9,508 bases of DNA, from the NCBI GenBank assembly GCA_000388065.2, contig KB932204.1, one strand, 5' to 3'. Shown piece after piece: positions 63 through 8,309 of the stretch (the stretch's first letter is position 1; every line of letters starts with the position of its first letter). This DNA is from Fonticula alba ATCC 38817. Its lineage: Eukaryota > Protista > Nucleariida. The notes beneath the pieces are model-generated. The model was given only the letters and a program-made list of their open reading frames with translations, was not told where the DNA came from and did not search any database. The position numbers and the translations under genes are program-made.

Positions 63-2504
63 ATGTCCGCGCGGCTTTTCTCCATTCTCTGTTGCGGAGG
101 CAGTTCGGAAAGCAGCCAATCTACCAGATCCCACACCACCCCCCACGGCAAGGCCGGCGGGACAGCATCCTCGGCATCGGCCAGCTCGGCCGGCCAGCAC
201 ATCCCCCTGAGCGAGCAGCCCGGCGCCCCGAAGACGGCGGCCCACCTCCCCCCCCACACGCCGGCCAGCCCGGAGCACCACCCCCCGCAGCAGGCCCAAC
301 ACCAAGCCAAGGGCGCCATGGCGACGCCTGACGGCACGAACCCCGGCGGGGCGGCCCCCCCGGCCGCCGGGTCACCCATTTACTCCGCGGCCGCCGGTCC
401 CGGCAGCAGCAGCAACCCGCTGGCCAGTGTCGGGTACAGCGCGGCGGCGGTGTCCGGCACGGCCGGGGCCGGCGGGCCGGCCGACGGCGAGTGTCTGGCC
501 ACGTCGCTGAACCTGCTGGGGGATGTGCCGGCCCACCGGGCCGGGCGCAAGGTCCTGGTCCTGGACCTGGACGAGACGCTGGTGCACTCGTCCTTCCGGC
601 CGGTCGACCGGCCGGACTTCAGCGTGCCCGTGGAGATCGAGGGCCAGACGCACCGGGTCCATGTGCGCAAGCGCCCGTATGTCGATGCCTTCCTGCTGGC
701 CGTGGCCAAGCACTATGAGGTTGTGGTCTACACGGCCAGCCTGGCCAAGGTGCGTCGCTGTTGGGGTGTTCCTTGGCTGGGCATTCGGCGCGCGCGCGGG
801 TGCGTATGCTTGTGCATGTCTCTGACTTGATGATGCTGTGTCTTTCCGTTTTGCCTTGCGGTGTGTGCGCCCGTGTGTGTCTCCGTGTGTGTCTCCGTGC
901 GTGTCTCCGTGCGTGTCTCCGTGCGTGTCTTCGCATGTGACTCCGTACATGTCTGTGCATGTCCGTGCATGTCTCCGTATGTGACCCCGTGCATGCCCGT
1001 GCATGCCCGTGCATGTCCGTACGCGACTCCATGCGTGCCGCCGCCCGCCCGCGCGATGGCTCTCCTTTCTCGCGCACACACATACACACAGTACGCCGAC
1101 CCGGTGCTCGACCGGCTGGACCCCACCGGGGTCATCACGTCGCGGCTCTTCCGCGAGGCATGCTCCCTCTACCGGGACCAGTATGTGAAGGACCTGTCAC
1201 GGCTGGGCCGGCCGCTGGGGGATTGCATTTTGATCGACAACTCCCCGGCCTCGTATGCCTTCCACCCGGCCTACTCGATCCCCATCACCACCTGGCTGGA
1301 GGACCACCGCTGCTCGGAGCTCCTGGAGCTCCTGCCGCTGCTGATCGAGGACAGCGTGCACATTGCCGCCGGGGGGCCGGGCGGCAAGCCGGGCGAGTCC
1401 CACACCGCCGGCGGTGGGGGACCGGGCAGCAGCGGCGGCGGCGGCGGCGGCGGCGGCAAGGCCGATGACCCCCAGCAGCAGCAGCAGCACGGCGCCGACC
1501 CGGACGCCGGGCCGGCGGGGCTCCCCTGCGAGTGTGGCCGGGCCACGGCCGGGGCCGGGGCCCTCCCCGGGGCCGGGGGCTCCGGCTGCGGCGATGTCAC
1601 CGTGCCGATGTCCAATGCGGCCGGCATGACGGCCGAGAATTACCGGCGGTGGGTGCGCCGGCGAGCGGAGATCGCCGCGGTGGCGGAGCTGGCCCGGCCG
1701 ACCTTCGCCCGGCCGGACGCCACGGCCTTCCCCCCGAAGGAGTCGACCGTGGAGCCGGACGGCGGCCGGTCCGATGCCCTGGTGGACCTGCTCCTGCGGC
1801 GGTACCTGACCCCGGCGGAGCTGGCGTGCCTGGCGCGGGCCGAAACCCGGACCCGGGCCCGGTGGCCCGGCGGCCAGGCGCCCCCGCACCTGCCGGCCAC
1901 GCAGTACTCGCAGGCTGTGCCGGAGACGGACCTGACCCCGGAGGCGGCGCTGGCCCTGCCCCGGCCGGAGGAGAACCCGCCCATGGCCGACATCGAGGCG
2001 GACATCATGCTTTGCGGCCCGGACCCGGCGCCCTTCGGGCAGAATGACGAGTACCTGCGCCTGGCGGCGCTGGCCCTGGCCGGGGTAGACCCGGGGCCAG
2101 TGCCGCAGGGCGCGGCCATGGGCCCGGTCCGCGCCCTGGCCCTGGCTGGCCCGGCCCGGCCGGATGAGCTGGCCGCGGCGCAGGCGGCCGTCGCCGCGCG
2201 CGCTGCCAGCCGCGCCGCCGGCAGCGGCAGCGGCAGCACCTCGCCCACTTCGGCCGAGGCCGCGGCGCAGGCGCCGCCCTCGCCCACGGCCACCGCGGCG
2301 ACGGCGGCCCTGCCGCCGGCCTCCTCGGAGGAGGGCGGCCCCTCGCCGGCGGGCGAGGCGCTGCCGGTTGCCCCGGCGTCCAAGCAGCTGGCCGCCGAGG
2401 CGGACCGCCCCCTGCCGGCTGGCGACCGGGCCGACGATGACCCGGCCACCGCCGGCTGCCAGGAGGCCTTCGCGCGCATGGAGGTCTCGGCCCCGGCGTC
2501 CTGA
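63..2504 (+). CDS. FCP1/SCP-family (NIF domain) HAD-like protein phosphatase, Psr1/Psr2/CTDSP-like; join(63..749,1092..2504), 699 aa
   Basis: HAD motif I VLVLDLDETLVHS (DLDETL at 564-581); splicing AAG|GTGCGT..CACAG|TAC joins VYTASLAK to YADPVLDRLD, the canonical family sequence; downstream RLFREAC, YVKDLSRLGR, LIDNSPASYAFHP; N-terminal FSILCC resembles the yeast Psr1/2 N-terminus (recalled, not searched). Confidence 0.93.
750..1091 (+). other. Intron 1 of phosphatase gene (342 nt, phase 0)
   Basis: GTGCGT donor at 750, CACAG acceptor ending 1091; removal restores the conserved LAK-YAD junction. Confidence 0.92.
871..1038. repeat. Composite intronic minisatellite: 5 x 12-mer CCGTGYGTGTCT followed by degenerate 10/12-mers CCGTGCATGY
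   Basis: 12-mer copies at 871, 883, 895, 907, 919; CCGTGCATGY copies at 963, 987, 997, 1007. Confidence 0.9.
1434..1487 (+). repeat. Coding trinucleotide repeats (GGC)8 and (CAG)5 encoding polyGly/polyGln linker
   Basis: GGC x8 at 1434-1457; CAG x5 at 1473-1487, in the phosphatase frame just after the catalytic domain. Confidence 0.85.
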
Positions 2505-3164
2505 GGGGGGCGACATGCGCGCCGGCCCCCGTGTATCGGCGGGGGCCGCTCGCCCCCCCCCTCCCCCTGTGTATCTCTGCCCCGTCTCCCTCGGCCATAT
2601 GTGTGAGACGCGCAAGCCTCCAACCGCGTGCTGCGTGCCCCCCCCCCCCCCCCATACGCGCACATGCTCCCTCCTGGCAGTACCCGAGCCGCGGTGTCCG
2701 CGCCTGTGTCCGTGCCTGTGTTTGTGTGTGCGCGCGCGCGTGTCTGCATGCTCCTTGGCGCCGCGCCCCCTTCCGTCGCTCTCCCTTTCCGTCCTTTCTG
2801 TGTCCTGCCAGGCCCACGCCCCTGCGTGCGCGGGGGCCGTGCGGCCTCGCGCGCGCGTGTGCCGCCGAGACAAGAAAGAAAGTAGGCAGGGAGACGGCCG
2901 TGCCTGTCAGTGTCGGCCGGCCGTCGCCTGCCTGTTCGCCTTCCTCCCCTCCCTCTTCCCTCCCTTTTCACATATGCCCCGGCTGCGCTCGCGGTGTGCG
3001 TTGCCCTGCGCGCGCGCGCGCCCACACACGTGCACATCGCGCCGGGGGCGGAAGGGGCGGCGCGGGGGCCGGGGTCGAGGAGCATCCGCGTGCTGCCTCT
3101 CCTGCTCCCCCTCCCCCCTGAGAACCGTTCTTCAGTCTGCCCTCCCCTCCGCCATCTTCCTGCG

Positions 3165-3277
3165 GTGTGTGTGTGTGTGTGTGTGGGCTGCTTCCTCCCT
3201 CCCCCCTCCCCCAATATAGACCCCGTCTCACTTGCCGCCGACAGCCAGGAGTGTGTGCGTGTGTGTGTGTGTGTGTG
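3165..3277. repeat. (GT)n microsatellites between convergent genes
   Basis: (GT)10 at 3165-3184 and an imperfect GT run at 3251-3277. Confidence 0.9.
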
Positions 3278-3310
3278 GGTGGGCGGGTGGGTGTGCACTG
3301 GCGCGAGGAA

Positions 3311-3400
3311 GCCGGGCCATGCACGGGTCCACACAGGCAGCCGGGCCATGCACGGGGCCACACAGGCAGCCGGGCCATGCACGGGGCCACACAGGCAGCC
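3311..3400. repeat. Tandem repeat, 3 x 29 bp (GCCGGGCCATGCACGGGKCCACACAGGCA)
   Basis: Units at 3311-3339, 3340-3368, 3369-3397 with one mismatch in the first; no spacers. Confidence 0.93.
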
Positions 3401-3516
3401 GCATGCAAGCGCCCGGTGGTGACGCGCTTCCCGAAGGCAGGAGGCCAAACAATGGCCGGCAACACAACGACCCACGGCGGGGAGGAGGGCATTTCCATTG
3501 GATGGCCGGCGCCGGC

Positions 3517-4666
3517 TCAATGCCCGGCACGGCGCCGGGGGGCGGACAGGCCGACCGCCGGGCCCTGGGACAGGACGGCCGGGGGGCGGGGGCCGGCGTC
3601 GGCCGGGCCGATGGCCGGCGTCGGCGGCGTGCCAGTCCCGCCGCCCCCGAGGGACCCGCGCACCAGGCTGGCCATTTCGGCCTGGGCCTGGCGCATCTCC
3701 TCCACATCCATGGAGTTGAAGATGAGCGAGCTGAGCCACATCATGCCCAGGGGCAGGCCCAGGGACAGCATGAGCGGGTGCGTGGCAATCCCGTACAGGG
3801 TCCAGGAGGAGGTGCGCGCACGGAAGGGCCGGAAGAGCCCGGTCGGCCGGAGCTGCACCACCATCGGCGCCGCGTCCAGGGCCTGCGCATCGGGGAACAC
3901 CCGCCAGGGGGGGTACAGGCACCCGGCCCCCTGGACCTCGAGAATGTATGCGGCCTGGCGATCGAGCGAGTCGCTGGCCGGGGGGCAGGGGCGCAGGGGG
4001 GCGAGGACAGGCGCGAGTCAGCCCCGGGGCGCGCGAGCAGGCGAGGAGGAGGGCGGGGAGGGGGGTCCGGCAGGAGGAGCCCCATGGGCAAGGGGGAGAC
4101 GCACAAGACGAAGCTCCCGTCGCGCCGGACAGGGGTCACAATGGCCGGCCGGGCGGGGGCCGCGGTGGGGCCGGCCGGCCCGGGTACCGGCGTGGCGCGG
4201 ACGTGGGCCGCGGCCGTGATCGGGCCGCACATGTCTGTGCGCATGTGCGTGCGTGTGTGTGTGTGTGTGTGCGGATGTCAGCAGGTGGCCAGCCGGGGCG
4301 CATGCAACGGCAACAAGGGCGCATACCCTCGCGAAGGAGCTTGCCGGAGAAGGCTCGCCGCGAGGCGGGATCGGTGTTTGGCCGGAGGAACACCACCTCG
4401 GTGCTGGGACCGGGGGAAGAGCACACCCAGGGGAGGGGGAGGGGGGAGGGAGGGGGAGGGTACGTGGAGTGGCGGGGGGTCAGCAGCGCGCATCGGGGTC
4501 ACGGTGCCGGGGGATGCCAGCTACGGGGCGCGCACGTTTCGGTGGCGGCGCCAGCGGCGGCCGGCCCGGGCAGGTGCGCCAGCGACAGAAGGGCCAAGAG
4601 CAGGGCCAGGACCAGCAGGCAGGCCGGGCGCTGCGCCCGTTGCCCAGGCAGGCGCGTGTATGTCAT
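3517..4666 (-). CDS. EMC7: ER membrane protein complex subunit 7-like (EMC7/DUF2012); complement join(4666..4536,4403..4327,4234..4105,3973..3517), 264 aa
   Basis: Exon 1 gives signal peptide MTYTRLPGQRAQRPACLLVLALLLALLSLAHLPGPAAA; three GT-AG introns with compatible phases (2,1,2); spliced protein reads RRDGSFVFDSLDRQAAYILEVQGAGCLYPPWRV, then SWTLYGIATHPLMLSLGLPLGMMWLSSLIFNSMDVEEMRQAQAEM, matching the EMC7 pattern (DGSF..Y.VEV, then W...NPM...LP TM followed by D.EMR.EM) as recalled; total 795 nt, a multiple of 3. Confidence 0.8.
3974..4104 (-). other. EMC7 intron 3 (131 nt)
   Basis: GTGCGT donor, GCCAG acceptor, CTGAC at 4021-4017; joins DGSFVF to DSLDRQAAYILEV. Confidence 0.82.
4235..4326 (-). 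other. EMC7 intron 2 (92 nt) containing a (CA)n run
   Basis: GTATGC donor, CACAG acceptor, CTGAC at 4281-4277; frame preserved. Confidence 0.75.
4404..4535 (-). other. EMC7 intron 1 (132 nt)
   Basis: GTGCGC donor, CCCAG acceptor, CTGAC at 4483-4479; frame preserved. Confidence 0.75.
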
Positions 4667-4722
4667 GGGAAGGGAGGCGAGCGGGGAAGGGAAATGCGCG
4701 GTGGAGGAGGGGGGGGGGGGGG

Positions 4723-4847
4723 NNNNNNNNNNNNNNNNNNNNNNNNNNNNNNNNNNNNNNNNNNNNNNNNNNNNNNNNNNNNNNNNNNNNNNNNNNNNNN
4801 NNNNNNNNNNNNNNNNNNNNNNNNNNNNNNNNNNNNNNNNNNNNNNN
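4723..4847. other. Assembly gap (125 N) flanked by poly-G on both sides
   Basis: N run seen directly; G runs at 4709-4722 and 4848-4865. Confidence 0.99.
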
Positions 4848-5522
4848 GGGGGGGGGGGGGGGGGGACGCACGCCTAAACGCCCAGGCGCCCCGGGACGGG
4901 TGCGGTGGCTTGGTCTCCCCTCTCGGAGGCTGTCCGGCGGCCCCCGGCGGCAGGGAGCAATATCGTTGGCAGCAGGGGCACAATGCCCGGGCGTGGTCAC
5001 GGCGCCGCTGGCTCCCACGCGCAGGGGCTGCTCACGCGAGTCCGCGGGCCTTGGGGGCTCGTTGCTTTGGGGTCATGTGGACGCGGAGCACCACCACCCG
5101 GGACGTTCTGGTGTGTGTGTCTGTGTGAAGCAGGGTCTGTCCGTGGACTTTGCAGGCCCACCGCCAGCCGGAGGCATGGGGCAGGCGGCCTCCCTCCGAC
5201 GAGGATATACGCCTATTAAAATGGACAACTTGCTGCTTGTTTGGCTCTCTTGCGTGCTGGTGGTGGTGGCGGTGGCGGCGATCGGCCAGGAGCCTGGCGG
5301 CCTCTCCTCTCCCGGCCGGCTGGGGCCTGGGTCCCGGCGGGGACGTCTCGCGAAAGGCACCCGGAGGCATGTGACCCGGGCGCGCCAACATGATCGGACA
5401 ATGGGCAGCACGTCCTGACACCCGGGCCTCGCTCAAAGCAGGCTTCTGTCAGAGGCGCCTCCTTCTCGACAAGCGGGGGATTAATATGAACGCGGCGGTG
5501 TGCCGCCCGGCGAGGGGGGGGG

Positions 5523-6098
5523 NNNNNNNNNNNNNNNNNNNNNNNNNNNNNNNNNNNNNNNNNNNNNNNNNNNNNNNNNNNNNNNNNNNNNNNNNNNNNN
5601 NNNNNNNNNNNNNNNNNNNNNNNNNNNNNNNNNNNNNNNNNNNNNNNNNNNNNNNNNNNNNNNNNNNNNNNNNNNNNNNNNNNNNNNNNNNNNNNNNNNN
5701 NNNNNNNNNNNNNNNNNNNNNNNNNNNNNNNNNNNNNNNNNNNNNNNNNNNNNNNNNNNNNNNNNNNNNNNNNNNNNNNNNNNNNNNNNNNNNNNNNNNN
5801 NNNNNNNNNNNNNNNNNNNNNNNNNNNNNNNNNNNNNNNNNNNNNNNNNNNNNNNNNNNNNNNNNNNNNNNNNNNNNNNNNNNNNNNNNNNNNNNNNNNN
5901 NNNNNNNNNNNNNNNNNNNNNNNNNNNNNNNNNNNNNNNNNNNNNNNNNNNNNNNNNNNNNNNNNNNNNNNNNNNNNNNNNNNNNNNNNNNNNNNNNNNN
6001 NNNNNNNNNNNNNNNNNNNNNNNNNNNNNNNNNNNNNNNNNNNNNNNNNNNNNNNNNNNNNNNNNNNNNNNNNNNNNNNNNNNNNNNNNNNNNNNNNN
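5523..6098. other. Assembly gap (576 N) covering the proximal RPT5 promoter/5' leader
   Basis: N run seen directly; ends 21 nt before the RPT5 ATG. Confidence 0.99.
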
Positions 6099-6119
6099 AC
6101 CCGCTCCCCTCCAGTTGCC

Positions 6120-8208
6120 ATGTCCTCCCTCGAGAACGCCCTCGTGGAGAACGAGATCTCCCCGGAGATCCTCGCCATGACCGACGGCGAGCTCCGTCGC
6201 CGGATCAACGACATCGATGACGCCACGCAGGTGCGTGGGCTCCGGCCGACTGCCTTCCCTTGTTGCTCTGCTCGTCCCCCTGCTCTCGTCCATCCGCTCG
6301 CGCCACCCTCCCCCTAACGCCCCCGATTGCCTCTGTGGCCCTGGCGGCCGGCGCTTCCTTCCCCCCTTCCTGCTCTCGCTCTTGGCCCTCCCGCTGCCCT
6401 GCTCTTCCCCCCCCCCCCCGGCCCCGCTCGGGCCCGCCACAGTCCATGCAGAACCAAATCAATGCCATGGACAACGAGCGTAGCGGCAAGATGGAGATCC
6501 TGAACGCCAACCGGTCGCGCATCCGCGTGAACAAGCAGATGCCCTACCTGGTGGCCAACGTGGTGGAGGTCCTGTCGCCGGCCGACCTGGCCGCGGCCGC
6601 CGACGAGATCGACGGCGAGGCGGACGGCCCGGACGACGGGGCGCACGTCAACGAGGATGACAACCGCGACCACAAGTCGGCCGTGGTCAAGACCAGCACC
6701 CGGCAGACGGTGTTCCTGCCGATCGCCGGGCTGGTGGACCCGGAGTCTCTGCGCCCGGGCGACCTGGTCGGCGTCAACAAGGACAGCTTCCTCATCCTGG
6801 ACACGCTGCCGCCCGAGTATGACCCCCGTGTGAAGGCCATGGAGGTGGATGAGAAGCCGACTGAGGACTACAGGTGCGTGTGTCTGCTGGCTTGGGCTTG
6901 CCTTGTGTCCGGGGCACATATGCTGACTCTCTCTCTCTCTCTCTCTCCCCCTCCCCCTGTGTGTGCGTGTGCTGTGCGACTCGAATGGGGGCGGTGGGCT
7001 GCCGCATGGGGCTGCTTCTGTGTCTCCTGCTCCACTTCGCCGCCGTCATTTTTCTGCTGCTGCCCTCGGCGCTTGTCTTCCATCTGTCCCCCCTCCTGTC
7101 GCGCTCTCTTTTTGCGTTTTTTTCCATTGTCGCCTGCTGCCATCTGCTCCCCTTCCCCCCCCGCCCCCCCGTCCTTCGCTCTCGTCCCCCCTCTCGGCCC
7201 GGGCTGCTCGGCACATGCAGCGATGTCGGCGGCCTCGAGAAGCAGATCGAGGAGCTGGTCGAGGCGGTGGTCCTGCCAATCACGCACAAGGACCGCTTCG
7301 AGAAGCTGGGCATTCGGCCGCCCAAGGGCTGCCTGCTGTACGGGCCGCCCGGGACCGGGAAGACGCTGATGGCGCGCGCGTGTGCGGCCCAGACGAACTC
7401 CTGCTTCTTGAAGCTGGCCGCGCCGCAGCTGGTGCAGATGTTCATCGGTGATGGCGCGAAGCTGGTGCGCGATGCCTTCGCCCTGGCCAAGGAGAAGGCC
7501 CCGGCCATCATCTTCATCGATGAGCTGGATGCCATCGGTACCAAGCGCTTCGACTCCGACAAGTCCGGCGACCGTGAAGTCCAGCGGACCATGTTGGAGT
7601 TGCTCAACCAGCTGGACGGCTTCAGCAGCAATGACCAGGTGAAGGTGATCGCCGCCACCAACCGCATTGACATCCTGGATCCGGCGCTCCTGCGCTCCGG
7701 GCGTTTGGACCGGAAGATCGAGTTCCCCCACCCGAACGGTGCGTCTGCCTCCTGTGCCTGCCCTTGCCGGCGGTTGCACGTTCCCCTCCCCCCCGTCCGA
7801 GCTCGAGGAGGGCGGGGAGCGGGGGGAGGAACAACTCGTGTATGCTTGTGCGATCGAAGATCTGGCCCCCGATCTGACACCTACTGACCTGCCTGGTGGT
7901 GCGCATTGTCCGTCGTCCGCCTCCCCGCAACCCCTGGCTCAATATCATGGTGCATACATGCAGAGGAGGCCCGTGCGCAGATTCTCAAGATCCACTCGCG
8001 GAAAATGACCGTCCACCCGGGGGTCAACTACGAGGAGCTGGCCCGGTCGACGGAGGACTTCAACGGCGCCACCCTGAAGGCCGTGTGCGTGGAGGCCGGC
8101 ATGATCGCCCTGCGGAGGGGCGCCTCCGAGATCCACCACGAGGACTTCATGCAGGGTGTCCAGGAGGTCCAGGCCAAGAAGAAGGCCACGCTCAACTACT
8201 TTGCTTGA
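6120..8208 (+). CDS. RPT5: 26S proteasome regulatory AAA-ATPase subunit RPT5 (6A, TBP-1); join(6120..6230,6443..6873,7221..7738,7964..8208), 434 aa
   Basis: [25 protein letters not shown], spliced [26 protein letters not shown], Walker A GPPGTGKT, pore loop LVQMFIGDG, Walker [34 protein letters not shown], spliced [14 protein letters not shown]-terminus [10 protein letters not shown]; all three introns phase-compatible, total 1305 nt. Confidence 0.97.
6231..6442 (+). other. RPT5 intron 1 (212 nt)
   Basis: GTGCGT donor, CACAG acceptor, CTAAC at 6314-6318. Confidence 0.9.
6874..7220 (+). other. RPT5 intron 2 (347 nt) with (CT)10 at 6927-6946
   Basis: GTGCGT donor, TGCAG acceptor; restores EDY-S-DVGG. 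Confidence 0.95.
7739..7963 (+). other. RPT5 intron 3 (225 nt)
   Basis: GTGCGT donor, TGCAG acceptor, TACTGAC at 7882-7888; restores PN-E-EAR. Confidence 0.95.
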
Positions 8209-8219
8209 GCGCGGTGGCG

Positions 8220-8309
8220 CGCAGCCTTGGCCGAGGCCGATCCCCCCCCCCCCNNNNNNNNNNCGCAGCCTTGGCCGAGGCCGATCCCCCCCCCCCCCCC
8301 CCCCCCCCC
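8220..8309. other. 10-N gap flanked by a duplicated 22-mer plus poly-C; probable contig-overlap artefact
   Basis: CGCAGCCTTGGCCGAGGCCGAT at 8220-8241 and again at 8264-8285, each followed by a C run; Ns at 8254-8263. Confidence 0.8.

What the first reader, a model, noticed from the sequence alone, without database searches (positions are those of the whole stretch)
750..7963. Distant, donor-proximal branch points with strict AG-exclusion in all seven introns
Each intron contains a CTRAC. Distances (donor to branch A / branch A to acceptor), hand-counted: phosphatase i1 75/266; EMC7 i1 55/76, i2 48/43, i3 86/44; RPT5 i1 86/125, i2 52/294, i3 138 or 148/86 or 76. In every case there is no AG between the motif and the acceptor. 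Five introns, including the 342- and 347-nt ones, have no internal AG at all. The two that do (EMC7 i1, one AG; RPT5 i3, a cluster at 7800-7859) have them only upstream of the CTGAC. In RPT5 i2 the CTGAC is directly followed by (CT)10. Typical branch points sit about 18-40 nt from the acceptor; distant branch points with AG exclusion zones are known as a minority class in mammals. Here they look like the default, with intron length variation absorbed 3' of the branch point. That implies a spliceosome that fixes the branch near the donor and scans to the first AG. Caveats: the introns are A-poor, and near-matches (GTGAC at 937 and 981) exist in phosphatase i1.
Basis: partly seen in the sequence, partly recalled or inferred. 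Interest (0 to 1): 0.75.

Follow-up and report, generated by a model that had tools for sequence, protein, structure and literature searches.

The report
AG-free intron tails in Fonticula alba
The seven introns are ordinary spliceosomal introns of the amoeba Fonticula alba that follow the known rule "splice at the first AG after the branch site"; this organism tolerates unusually long branch-to-acceptor gaps, but its branch sites are not generally fixed near the intron start.

Summary
Each of the seven introns has a CTRAC box and no AG between it and the acceptor. Five have no internal AG at all. The assembly gaps are intergenic and touch no intron or flanking exon.

I built an independent intron set from about 280 kb of the same genome (84 filtered introns). 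A de novo 5-mer search there returns CTAAC, ACTGA and CTGAC as the top words. The share of A's followed by G is 0.15-0.17 upstream of the box and within 12 nt after it, then 0.03-0.07 further on. The acceptor is the first AG beyond +12 in 57 of 62 introns, against 37.8 expected.

So the branch-site reading and the AG exclusion zone are real. This is the known first-AG rule.

The "donor-proximal by default" reading fails. Genome-wide the branch A lies a median of 52 nt from the acceptor and 90 nt from the donor. Both segments absorb length variation. About 13% of tails are 100 nt or longer, far above the human estimate. The window's tails of 125, 266 and 294 nt are the upper tail of this spread.

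U2 carries the canonical GUAGUA; Slu7 and Prp18 matches are present.

The scan has flagged the same pattern on other pieces of this genome.

The parts
750..1091 (+). Intron 1 of the NIF/FCP1-like phosphatase gene (342 nt, GTGCGT...CAG)
   Evidence: Pfam NIF profile positions 1-63 end at 749 and 66-151 start at 1092. My gene finder recovers the same intron. No internal AG.
822..826 (+). CTGAC branch-site box, branch A at 825 (75 nt from the donor, 266 nt from the acceptor)
   Evidence: Only CTRAC in this intron. A's at 11-156 nt from the acceptor mean a nearer non-consensus branch cannot be excluded here.
871..1017 (+). AG-free 12-nt tandem repeat (12.9 copies) that makes up more than half of the phosphatase intron tail
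   Evidence: Tandem Repeats Finder.
4404..4535 (-). EMC7-like gene (H696_02735) intron 1, 132 nt; CTGAC at 4479-4483 (branch A 4480); single AG at intron position 14
   Evidence: Exon translations match P0001 residues 1-43 and 45-69. Counts. The nearest A at 10 nt or more from the acceptor is 57 nt away.
4235..4326 (-). EMC7-like intron 2, 92 nt; CTGAC at 4277-4281 (branch A 4278), 43 nt from the acceptor; tail is a CA repeat
   Evidence: P0001 residues 45-69 and 71-112 flank it. Counts. TG/CA repeat 4244-4271.
3974..4104 (-). EMC7-like intron 3, 131 nt; CTGAC at 4017-4021 (branch A 4018), 44 nt from the acceptor
   Evidence: P0001 residues 71-112 and 114-264 flank it. The intron holds only 4 A's, and the box A is the only A between the acceptor AG and 44 nt upstream of it.
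6231..6442 (+). RPT5 intron 1, 212 nt; CTAAC at 6314-6318 (branch A 6317), 125 nt from the acceptor
   Evidence: Frame, coding score and gene finder. Exon 2 aligns to RPT5 chains from its residue 4. No A lies between 4 and 115 nt upstream of the acceptor, so an adenosine branch must be at least 116 nt away.
6874..7220 (+). RPT5 intron 2, 347 nt; CTGAC at 6923-6927 (branch A 6926), 294 nt from the acceptor; (CT)10.5 at 6927-6947 directly after it
   Evidence: The junction joins residues 173 and 175 of PDB 8amz_M. Counts; repeat. The nearest A at 10 nt or more from the acceptor is 78 nt away.
7739..7963 (+). RPT5 intron 3, 225 nt; six AGs at 7800-7859, then CTGAC at 7874-7878 and 7884-7888 (branch A 7877 or 7887), then 76-86 nt without AG
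   Evidence: The junction joins residues 345/346 and 348 of 8amz_M. Counts. Of the seven, this intron shows the AG step at the box most clearly (six AGs upstream, none after); EMC7 i1 has one upstream AG.

Best explanation
These are ordinary U2-type GT-AG introns of Fonticula alba.

- The signals are strong and yeast-like: donor GTRCGY and branch box (A/T)CTRAC, which pairs with the canonical GUAGUA of U2.
- The acceptor is the first AG lying more than about 12 nt downstream of the branch.
- Selection therefore keeps the branch-to-acceptor interval free of AG. It also roughly halves AG across the whole intron on the sense strand.
- The branch-to-acceptor spacing is loosely constrained in this organism: median about 50 nt, and about one intron in eight at 100 nt or more.
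- The spacing from the donor has only a lower limit of about 45-50 nt.
- The window's tails of 125, 266 and 294 nt are the upper tail of that distribution. Part of their length is AG-free tandem repeats.

Shown here: the motif, the AG step, the distance distributions, and the canonical U2 sequence.
Inferred: that the distant CTRAC boxes are the branches actually used, and how the AG is reached over 100-300 nt.
For: - Exact counts.
- De novo 5-mer enrichment in 88 filtered introns (84 of them outside the window): CTAAC 20 introns against 3.4 expected, ACTGA 23 against 5.0, CTGAC 48 against 17.1.
- 74% of the 84 independent introns carry an exact CTRAC. Most of the rest carry CTGAT, CTCAC, TTGAC or CTAAT.
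- Share of A's followed by G: 0.15-0.17 from -200 to +12 around the branch A, 0.03 at +12..+30, and 0.07 at +30..+60.
- First-AG rule holds in 57 of 62 introns against 37.8 expected, z 6.5. It holds in 91-95% under looser and stricter filters.
- Intron AG/GA 0.53 against CT/TC 1.11; non-genic 0.96.
- 37% of independent introns have no internal AG; the median AG-free stretch before the acceptor is 112 nt.
- A-free stretches force branch distances of at least 116, 78 and 57 nt, and exactly 44 nt, in RPT5 i1, RPT5 i2, EMC7 i1 and EMC7 i3.
- U2 snRNA: two full-length copies carrying GUAGUA. Slu7 and Prp18 domains are present.
- The bypass of AGs within 12-15 nt of the branch and the first-AG search are as described for mammals in PMC1431707.
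Against: - No lariat or RNA-seq data were available, so no branch is mapped.
- The independent intron set is small: 84 introns from about 1% of the genome. It comes from my own gene finder, not from transcripts.
- The gene finder picks the acceptor by coding score, which can slightly favour upstream AGs and so flatter the rule.
- Five of 62 introns break the rule; two of these are low-confidence predictions.
- In PPase i1 many A's lie near the acceptor, so a weak proximal branch remains possible.
- The AG-free statistic for that intron is inflated by a tandem repeat.
Confidence: 0.7

Rival explanations
1. The Fonticula spliceosome sets the branch at a fixed short distance from the donor as its default, and all intron length variation lies between branch and acceptor.
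For: In the window three branch boxes sit 48-55 nt from the donor, and intron length tracks the 3' segment. Other first-stage notes on this genome report similar cases.
Against: In the independent set the donor-to-branch distance has a median of 90 nt (5th-95th percentile of the 66-intron set 52-225) and a larger variance than the branch-to-acceptor distance. The median relative position is 0.64. 37% of branches lie within 40 nt of the acceptor. Tandem repeats cover both sides about equally.
Confidence: 0.07
2. In the long-tailed introns the real branch is a weak, non-consensus site near the acceptor. The donor-proximal CTRAC is a chance or decoy match, and the AG-free tail reflects A-poor, repeat-derived sequence.
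For: CTRAC arises by chance in 12-46% of shuffles per intron. The PPase i1 tail has A's at 11-156 nt from the acceptor and is half tandem repeat. About a quarter of the genome's introns work without an exact CTRAC. Three or four of the seven tails are AG-free simply for lack of A.
Against: RPT5 i1 has no A between 4 and 115 nt from the acceptor, RPT5 i2 none between 8 and 77 nt, and EMC7 i1 none between 2 and 56 nt. All seven introns having a box by chance has probability about 7e-5. Genome-wide the AG step is anchored on the box.
Confidence: 0.15
3. The AG shortage is only base composition (A about 8-10%, pyrimidine-rich introns), with no selection.
For: Mononucleotide shuffles leave 33 of 66 tails AG-free anyway. 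Several window tails have 0-3 A's.
Against: GA has the same composition as AG but is twice as frequent in introns. The complementary pair CT/TC shows no such bias, and non-genic DNA is symmetric. The share of A's followed by G falls three- to fivefold, from about 0.16 to 0.03-0.07, from 12 nt past the box while A content stays about 10%.
Confidence: 0.04
4. Long tails are folded so that an RNA stem brings the acceptor close to the branch, as in S. cerevisiae COF1 and UBC13 (PMC3239191).
For: The two longest tails fold better than shuffles: z -2.4 and -2.2, -2.1 and -2.6 on recomputation. In three window tails the minimum-energy fold pairs a TGTG-type stretch near the branch with the CACAG-type acceptor end.
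Against: Across 21 tails of 70 nt or more the mean z is -0.41 (p 0.20). The structural path length is 24 nt against 30 nt in shuffles, so any G+C-rich tail compacts about as much. RPT5 i1 has z 0.14.
Confidence: 0.15

Closest known systems
Distant branch points with AG dinucleotide exclusion zones in mammals (Gooding et al. 2006, PMC1431707)
   Same: A consensus branch box lies at the 5' end of a long AG-free stretch. The first AG downstream is used. AGs within about 12-15 nt of the branch are bypassed, and AGs are more frequent upstream of the zone. All are seen here.
   Different: In humans about 1.2% of introns have an AG-free zone of 100 nt or more, and an estimated 1 in 160 to 1 in 400 have distant branch points. 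These exons are enriched for alternative splicing. In my Fonticula sample 57% of introns have such a zone and about 13% have a CTRAC 100 nt or more from the acceptor. They occur in short constitutive introns of housekeeping genes. No branch is mapped here.
S. cerevisiae-type introns: strong UACUAAC box, variable branch-to-AG distance, structure-assisted distant acceptors (PMC3239191, PMC2483917)
   Same: Strong donor and branch consensus, a loosely constrained branch-to-AG distance, and use of the first accessible AG.
   Different: The second-longest yeast spacing is 155 nt and long ones depend on stems (PMC3239191). Here tails reach 266-294 nt, with no fold signal beyond shuffles across the set. 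Fonticula has several introns per gene, unlike yeast.
Intron-poor lineages with a fixed, very short branch-to-AG distance (D. hansenii, E. gossypii; PMC2483917)
   Same: Strong branch-site consensus.
   Different: The opposite spacing behaviour: 5-10 nt there, against a median of about 50 nt and a broad spread here.

Membership tests
U2-type GT-AG spliceosomal intron | GT donor and AG acceptor that restore the reading frame of a conserved protein | tested here: met
   RPT5 i1 is supported by frame and coding score only.
U2-type GT-AG spliceosomal intron | Branch box complementary to the U2 snRNA GUAGUA | tested here: met
   CTRAC is present in all seven introns and is the top enriched 5-mer in independent introns. 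The U2 copy read (L043) carries GUAGUA; a second full-length U2 match exists.
Distant-branch-point / AG-exclusion-zone introns | AG-free zone of 100 nt or more before the acceptor | tested here: met
   Met in six of the seven. EMC7 i2 is only 92 nt long and wholly AG-free.
Distant-branch-point / AG-exclusion-zone introns | Consensus branch box at the 5' end of the zone, with AG at normal frequency upstream of it | tested here: inconclusive
   Visible in RPT5 i3 and EMC7 i1 only. In five introns the zone runs to the donor, so it does not locate the branch. In the genome sample the step is clear.
Distant-branch-point / AG-exclusion-zone introns | Branch more than about 40 nt, or classically 100 nt or more, from the acceptor | tested here: inconclusive
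   By motif all seven exceed 40 nt (43-294 nt) and three are 100 nt or more. A-free stretches independently force at least 116 nt (RPT5 i1), 78 nt (RPT5 i2), 57 nt (EMC7 i1) and 44 nt (EMC7 i3), assuming an adenosine branch.
Distant-branch-point / AG-exclusion-zone introns | Experimentally mapped lariat at the distant site | not testable with these tools
Structure-assisted distant acceptors (yeast COF1/UBC13 type) | A stem between branch and acceptor that is more stable than composition predicts | tested here: inconclusive
   The two longest tails have z of about -2.1 to -2.6. The set of 21 long tails has mean z -0.41, p 0.20.
EMC7 (ER membrane complex subunit 7) | Match to the EMC7 beta-sandwich family or to solved EMC7 chains | tested here: not met
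   No Pfam hit for exons 2, 3 or 4 searched singly (E up to 0.01; exon 1 was not searched). No PDB hit for exon 4. The name rests only on the UniRef label of P0001. The domain may be split across exons.

The most novel reading that the evidence does not exclude
Fonticula alba may routinely use branch points 100-300 nt from the acceptor, in roughly one intron in eight. These would be constitutive introns of housekeeping genes with no dedicated RNA structure. About a third of its introns have been purged of every internal AG. That would make it a natural system in which the long-range first-AG search is the everyday mode rather than a rare regulated exception.
Probability: 0.4. Interest if true: 0.45.

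Novelty: new member of a known kind. Interest (0 to 1): 0.3.

Why it matters
How the spliceosome finds the 3' splice site after branch formation is still debated: linear scanning, diffusion, or structural compaction. Natural distant-branch introns are rare in the usual model organisms. An organism with strong, easily predicted branch boxes, a strict first-AG rule and many long AG-free tails would give many natural test cases. It would also warn annotators not to look for branch points only in the last 40 nt. In practice the first-AG-after-CTRAC rule could improve acceptor prediction in this G+C-rich genome.

Tried and rejected
- **More genome sequence.** Three later family searches (Pkinase, Helicase_C, Ras) returned coordinates but no loci. 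The sample stayed at about 280 kb.
- **Structure in long tails.** No signal beyond dinucleotide shuffles across 21 tails.
- **Tandem-repeat asymmetry.** Repeat coverage is 18% upstream and 23% downstream of the box, so repeats do not expand the 3' side in particular.
- **Motif-free branch distance from A-free stretches.** Only 14% of independent introns lack an A at 10-40 nt from the acceptor, and 1% beyond 100 nt. This argument works for four window introns but not for the genome as a whole.
- **Identity and border checks that found nothing.** Pfam on EMC7 exons 2-4 (exon 1 not searched) and RPT5 exon 1. PDB on EMC7 exon 4 and RPT5 exon 1.
- **U2AF large subunit (TIGR01642).** Only exon-sized RRM pieces below the family cut-off. 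The best collinear pair is at C3:1391922-1393002 and is inconclusive. U2AF35, SF1 and Prp22 were not searched, for lack of a specific family model or a tool-given query.
- **Literature.** No paper on Fonticula branch points was found.
- **Joined gene models.** Not searched. Each exon was searched by reference on its own.
Full report
**Source and layout**

The window is G000:C4:935690-945197 of a 31.3-Mb assembly. Exon 4 of the minus-strand gene is 100% identical to the public protein H696_02735 of Fonticula alba. This agrees with earlier notes of the scan.

The window holds three genes:
- a NIF/FCP1-like phosphatase, exons 63-749 and 1092-2501;
- an EMC7-labelled gene on the minus strand, 4666..3520, four exons;
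- RPT5, 6120-8205, four exons.

**Gaps first**

The gaps at 4723-4847 and 5523-6098 lie between the EMC7 start codon (4666, minus strand) and the RPT5 start codon (6120). No intron or flanking exon touches them. Whether the sequence is continuous across them cannot be known, and it does not matter for the finding. The frame upstream of the RPT5 ATG stays open up to the gap, 21 nt away, so the start codon itself is not certain.

**Intron borders**

- EMC7: the four exon translations sit at residues 1-43, 45-69, 71-112 and 114-264 of the 264-residue public protein. One split codon lies at each junction.
- RPT5: exons 2, 3 and 4 align to residues 57-173, 175-345 and 348-427 of PDB chain 8amz_M. 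The human chain behaves the same way.
- Phosphatase: the intron joins NIF profile positions 63 and 66.
- RPT5 i1: this rests on frame, coding score and my gene finder. Exon 1 alone has no PDB match.

I searched every exon by reference on its own. I did not search joined models.

**The observation**

All hand counts are exact.
- Each intron has one CTRAC; RPT5 i3 has two.
- None has an AG after the box.
- Five have no internal AG at all.

The chance of a CTRAC per intron is 0.12-0.46 by dinucleotide shuffles, so about 7e-5 for all seven.

For the AG-free tails I used a conservative null: the share of A's followed by G upstream of branch boxes in this genome, 0.166. The per-intron probabilities are then 0.013, 0.58, 0.079, 1.0, 0.70, 0.14 and 0.16. 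Their product, my arithmetic, is about 1e-5.

Two caveats apply:
- Three or four tails are AG-free simply because they hold 0-3 A's.
- More than half of the phosphatase tail is a 12-nt tandem repeat (871-1017), so its A's are not independent.

The scarcity of A is informative in its own right. An adenosine branch must lie at least 116 nt from the acceptor in RPT5 i1, at least 78 nt in RPT5 i2, at least 57 nt in EMC7 i1, and exactly at the box (44 nt) in EMC7 i3.

**Genome sample**

I fetched 200 kb of contig 1 and used 16 non-overlapping loci from an AAA-domain search.

I wrote a codon log-odds Viterbi gene finder.
- Intron and intergenic bases score zero.
- Acceptors need only an AG.
- Only the donor matrix and codon table are self-trained.
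- Neither AG content nor branch motifs can therefore shape the predictions.

Where a Pfam domain is split it reproduces the borders exactly. For example, the AAA pieces 1-66 and 67-129 on contig 11 flank a predicted 150-nt intron.

It predicted 154 gap-free introns. Of these, 88 passed the filters: the intron is needed to keep the frame open, both flanking exons score above 10 bits, and the donor scores above 4 bits. 84 of the 88 lie outside the window. Median length is 156 nt. The donor consensus is GT(G/A)(C/T)G(T/C).

**Branch signal**

A blind 5-mer enrichment against per-intron Markov simulations puts three words on top:
- CTAAC, in 20 introns against 3.4 expected;
- ACTGA, in 23 against 5.0;
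- CTGAC, in 48 against 17.1.

74% of independent introns have an exact CTRAC. Most of the others have CTGAT, CTCAC, TTGAC or CTAAT. Both U2 snRNA genes are full length, and the copy I read carries the canonical GUAGUA.

**AG exclusion**

I aligned the 62 independent introns on the last CTRAC and measured the share of A's followed by G.

| Position relative to the branch A | Share of A's followed by G |
|---|---|
| -200..-60 | 0.173 |
| -60..-30 | 0.158 |
| -30..-8 | 0.149 |
| +2..+12 | 0.155 |
| +12..+30 | 0.032 |
| +30..+60 | 0.066 |

- A content stays near 10% on both sides.
- The bin beyond +60 (0.118) is dominated by two low-confidence predictions.
- The acceptor is the first AG beyond +12 in 57 of 62 introns, against 37.8 expected (z 6.5). 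This holds in 91-95% under looser or stricter filters.
- Over whole introns, AG is about half as frequent as GA (165 against 311). CT/TC on the same strand is 1.11, and non-genic DNA gives 0.96. The depletion is therefore sense-strand specific and not compositional.
- 37% of introns have no internal AG. The median AG-free stretch before the acceptor is 112 nt.

This matches the behaviour described for mammalian distant branch points. There the first AG after the branch is used and AGs within 12-15 nt of the branch are bypassed (PMC1431707).

**Distances**

In the independent set:
- The branch A lies a median of 52 nt from the acceptor (bootstrap CI 41-66, IQR 31-80).
- It lies a median of 90 nt from the donor, with a floor near 45-50 nt.
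- Its median relative position is 0.64 of intron length.
- 37% of branches are within 40 nt of the acceptor, and 13% (CI 5-23%) are at 100 nt or more.
- The 5' segment varies more than the 3' segment (variance 4834 against 2875).
- In the 66-intron set that includes the window, both segments correlate equally with intron length (Spearman 0.49 and 0.48).

Tandem repeats cover both sides about equally. The branch is therefore not anchored near the donor, and length variation is not absorbed only on the 3' side.

The window's tails are longer than the sample (Mann-Whitney p 0.045). Three of seven are at 100 nt or more, against 13% in the sample (p 0.05).

Compared with humans, such distances are very common here. 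Human figures are about 1.2% of introns with an AG-free zone of 100 nt or more, and 1 in 160 to 1 in 400 with distant branch points (PMC1431707). An earlier follow-up in this scan put ordinary Fonticula branch sites about 50 nt from the intron end, and my sample agrees.

**How an AG 100-300 nt away is reached**

The two longest tails fold somewhat better than shuffles (z -2.4 and -2.2). RPT5 i1 does not (z 0.14).

Across 21 long tails the mean z is -0.41 (p 0.20). The structural path from branch to acceptor is 24 nt, against 30 nt in shuffles. Any G+C-rich tail therefore compacts to about that length. There is no evidence for dedicated stems of the yeast COF1/UBC13 kind (PMC3239191).

The second-step factors Slu7 and Prp18 are encoded. 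A U2AF-large-like locus is only suggested.

**Verdict**

The branch-site and first-AG parts of the interpretation are supported, and they are already-known mechanisms. The claim that the branch is donor-proximal by default is not supported.

The new element is quantitative and specific to this organism: loose branch-to-acceptor spacing with frequent long AG-free tails. It rests on a small computational sample with no lariat data. No paper on Fonticula branch points turned up.

Noticed in passing
L012 (G000:C3:16492-17001, minus strand): A 510-nt intron splits the AAA domain of another gene (Pfam pieces 1-34 and 31-131). It has six AGs in its first 100 nt. A CTCAC/CTGAT pair follows at about position 134-138, then about 400 nt of AG-free minisatellites. 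There is also a CTGAC only 6 nt before the acceptor, so which branch is used is unclear.
   Followed up: partly
window 8221-8300: The 10-N gap at 8254-8263 is flanked on both sides by the same stretch of about 30 nt ending in a C run. This looks like an assembly duplication at a homopolymer. All gaps in the window abut C or G homopolymers.
   Followed up: no
window 3306-3401: A 29-nt tandem repeat (3.3 copies, 97% identical) lies just past the 3' end of the EMC7-labelled gene.
   Followed up: no
G000:C2:536727-536913 (+) and G000:C1:744266-744452 (-): Two full-length U2 snRNA genes (104 and 102 bits). The copy read (L043) has the canonical branch-site-binding GUAGUA.
   Followed up: partly
window 1380-2501: The phosphatase has a long, low-complexity, Ala/Gly/Pro-rich C-terminal extension of about 370 residues after the NIF domain, with no Pfam match.
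   Followed up: no
window 3520-4666 (minus strand): The gene labelled EMC7 by UniRef gives no Pfam match for exons 2-4 searched singly (exon 1 not searched) and no PDB match for exon 4. Its family assignment is unverified here.
   Followed up: partly
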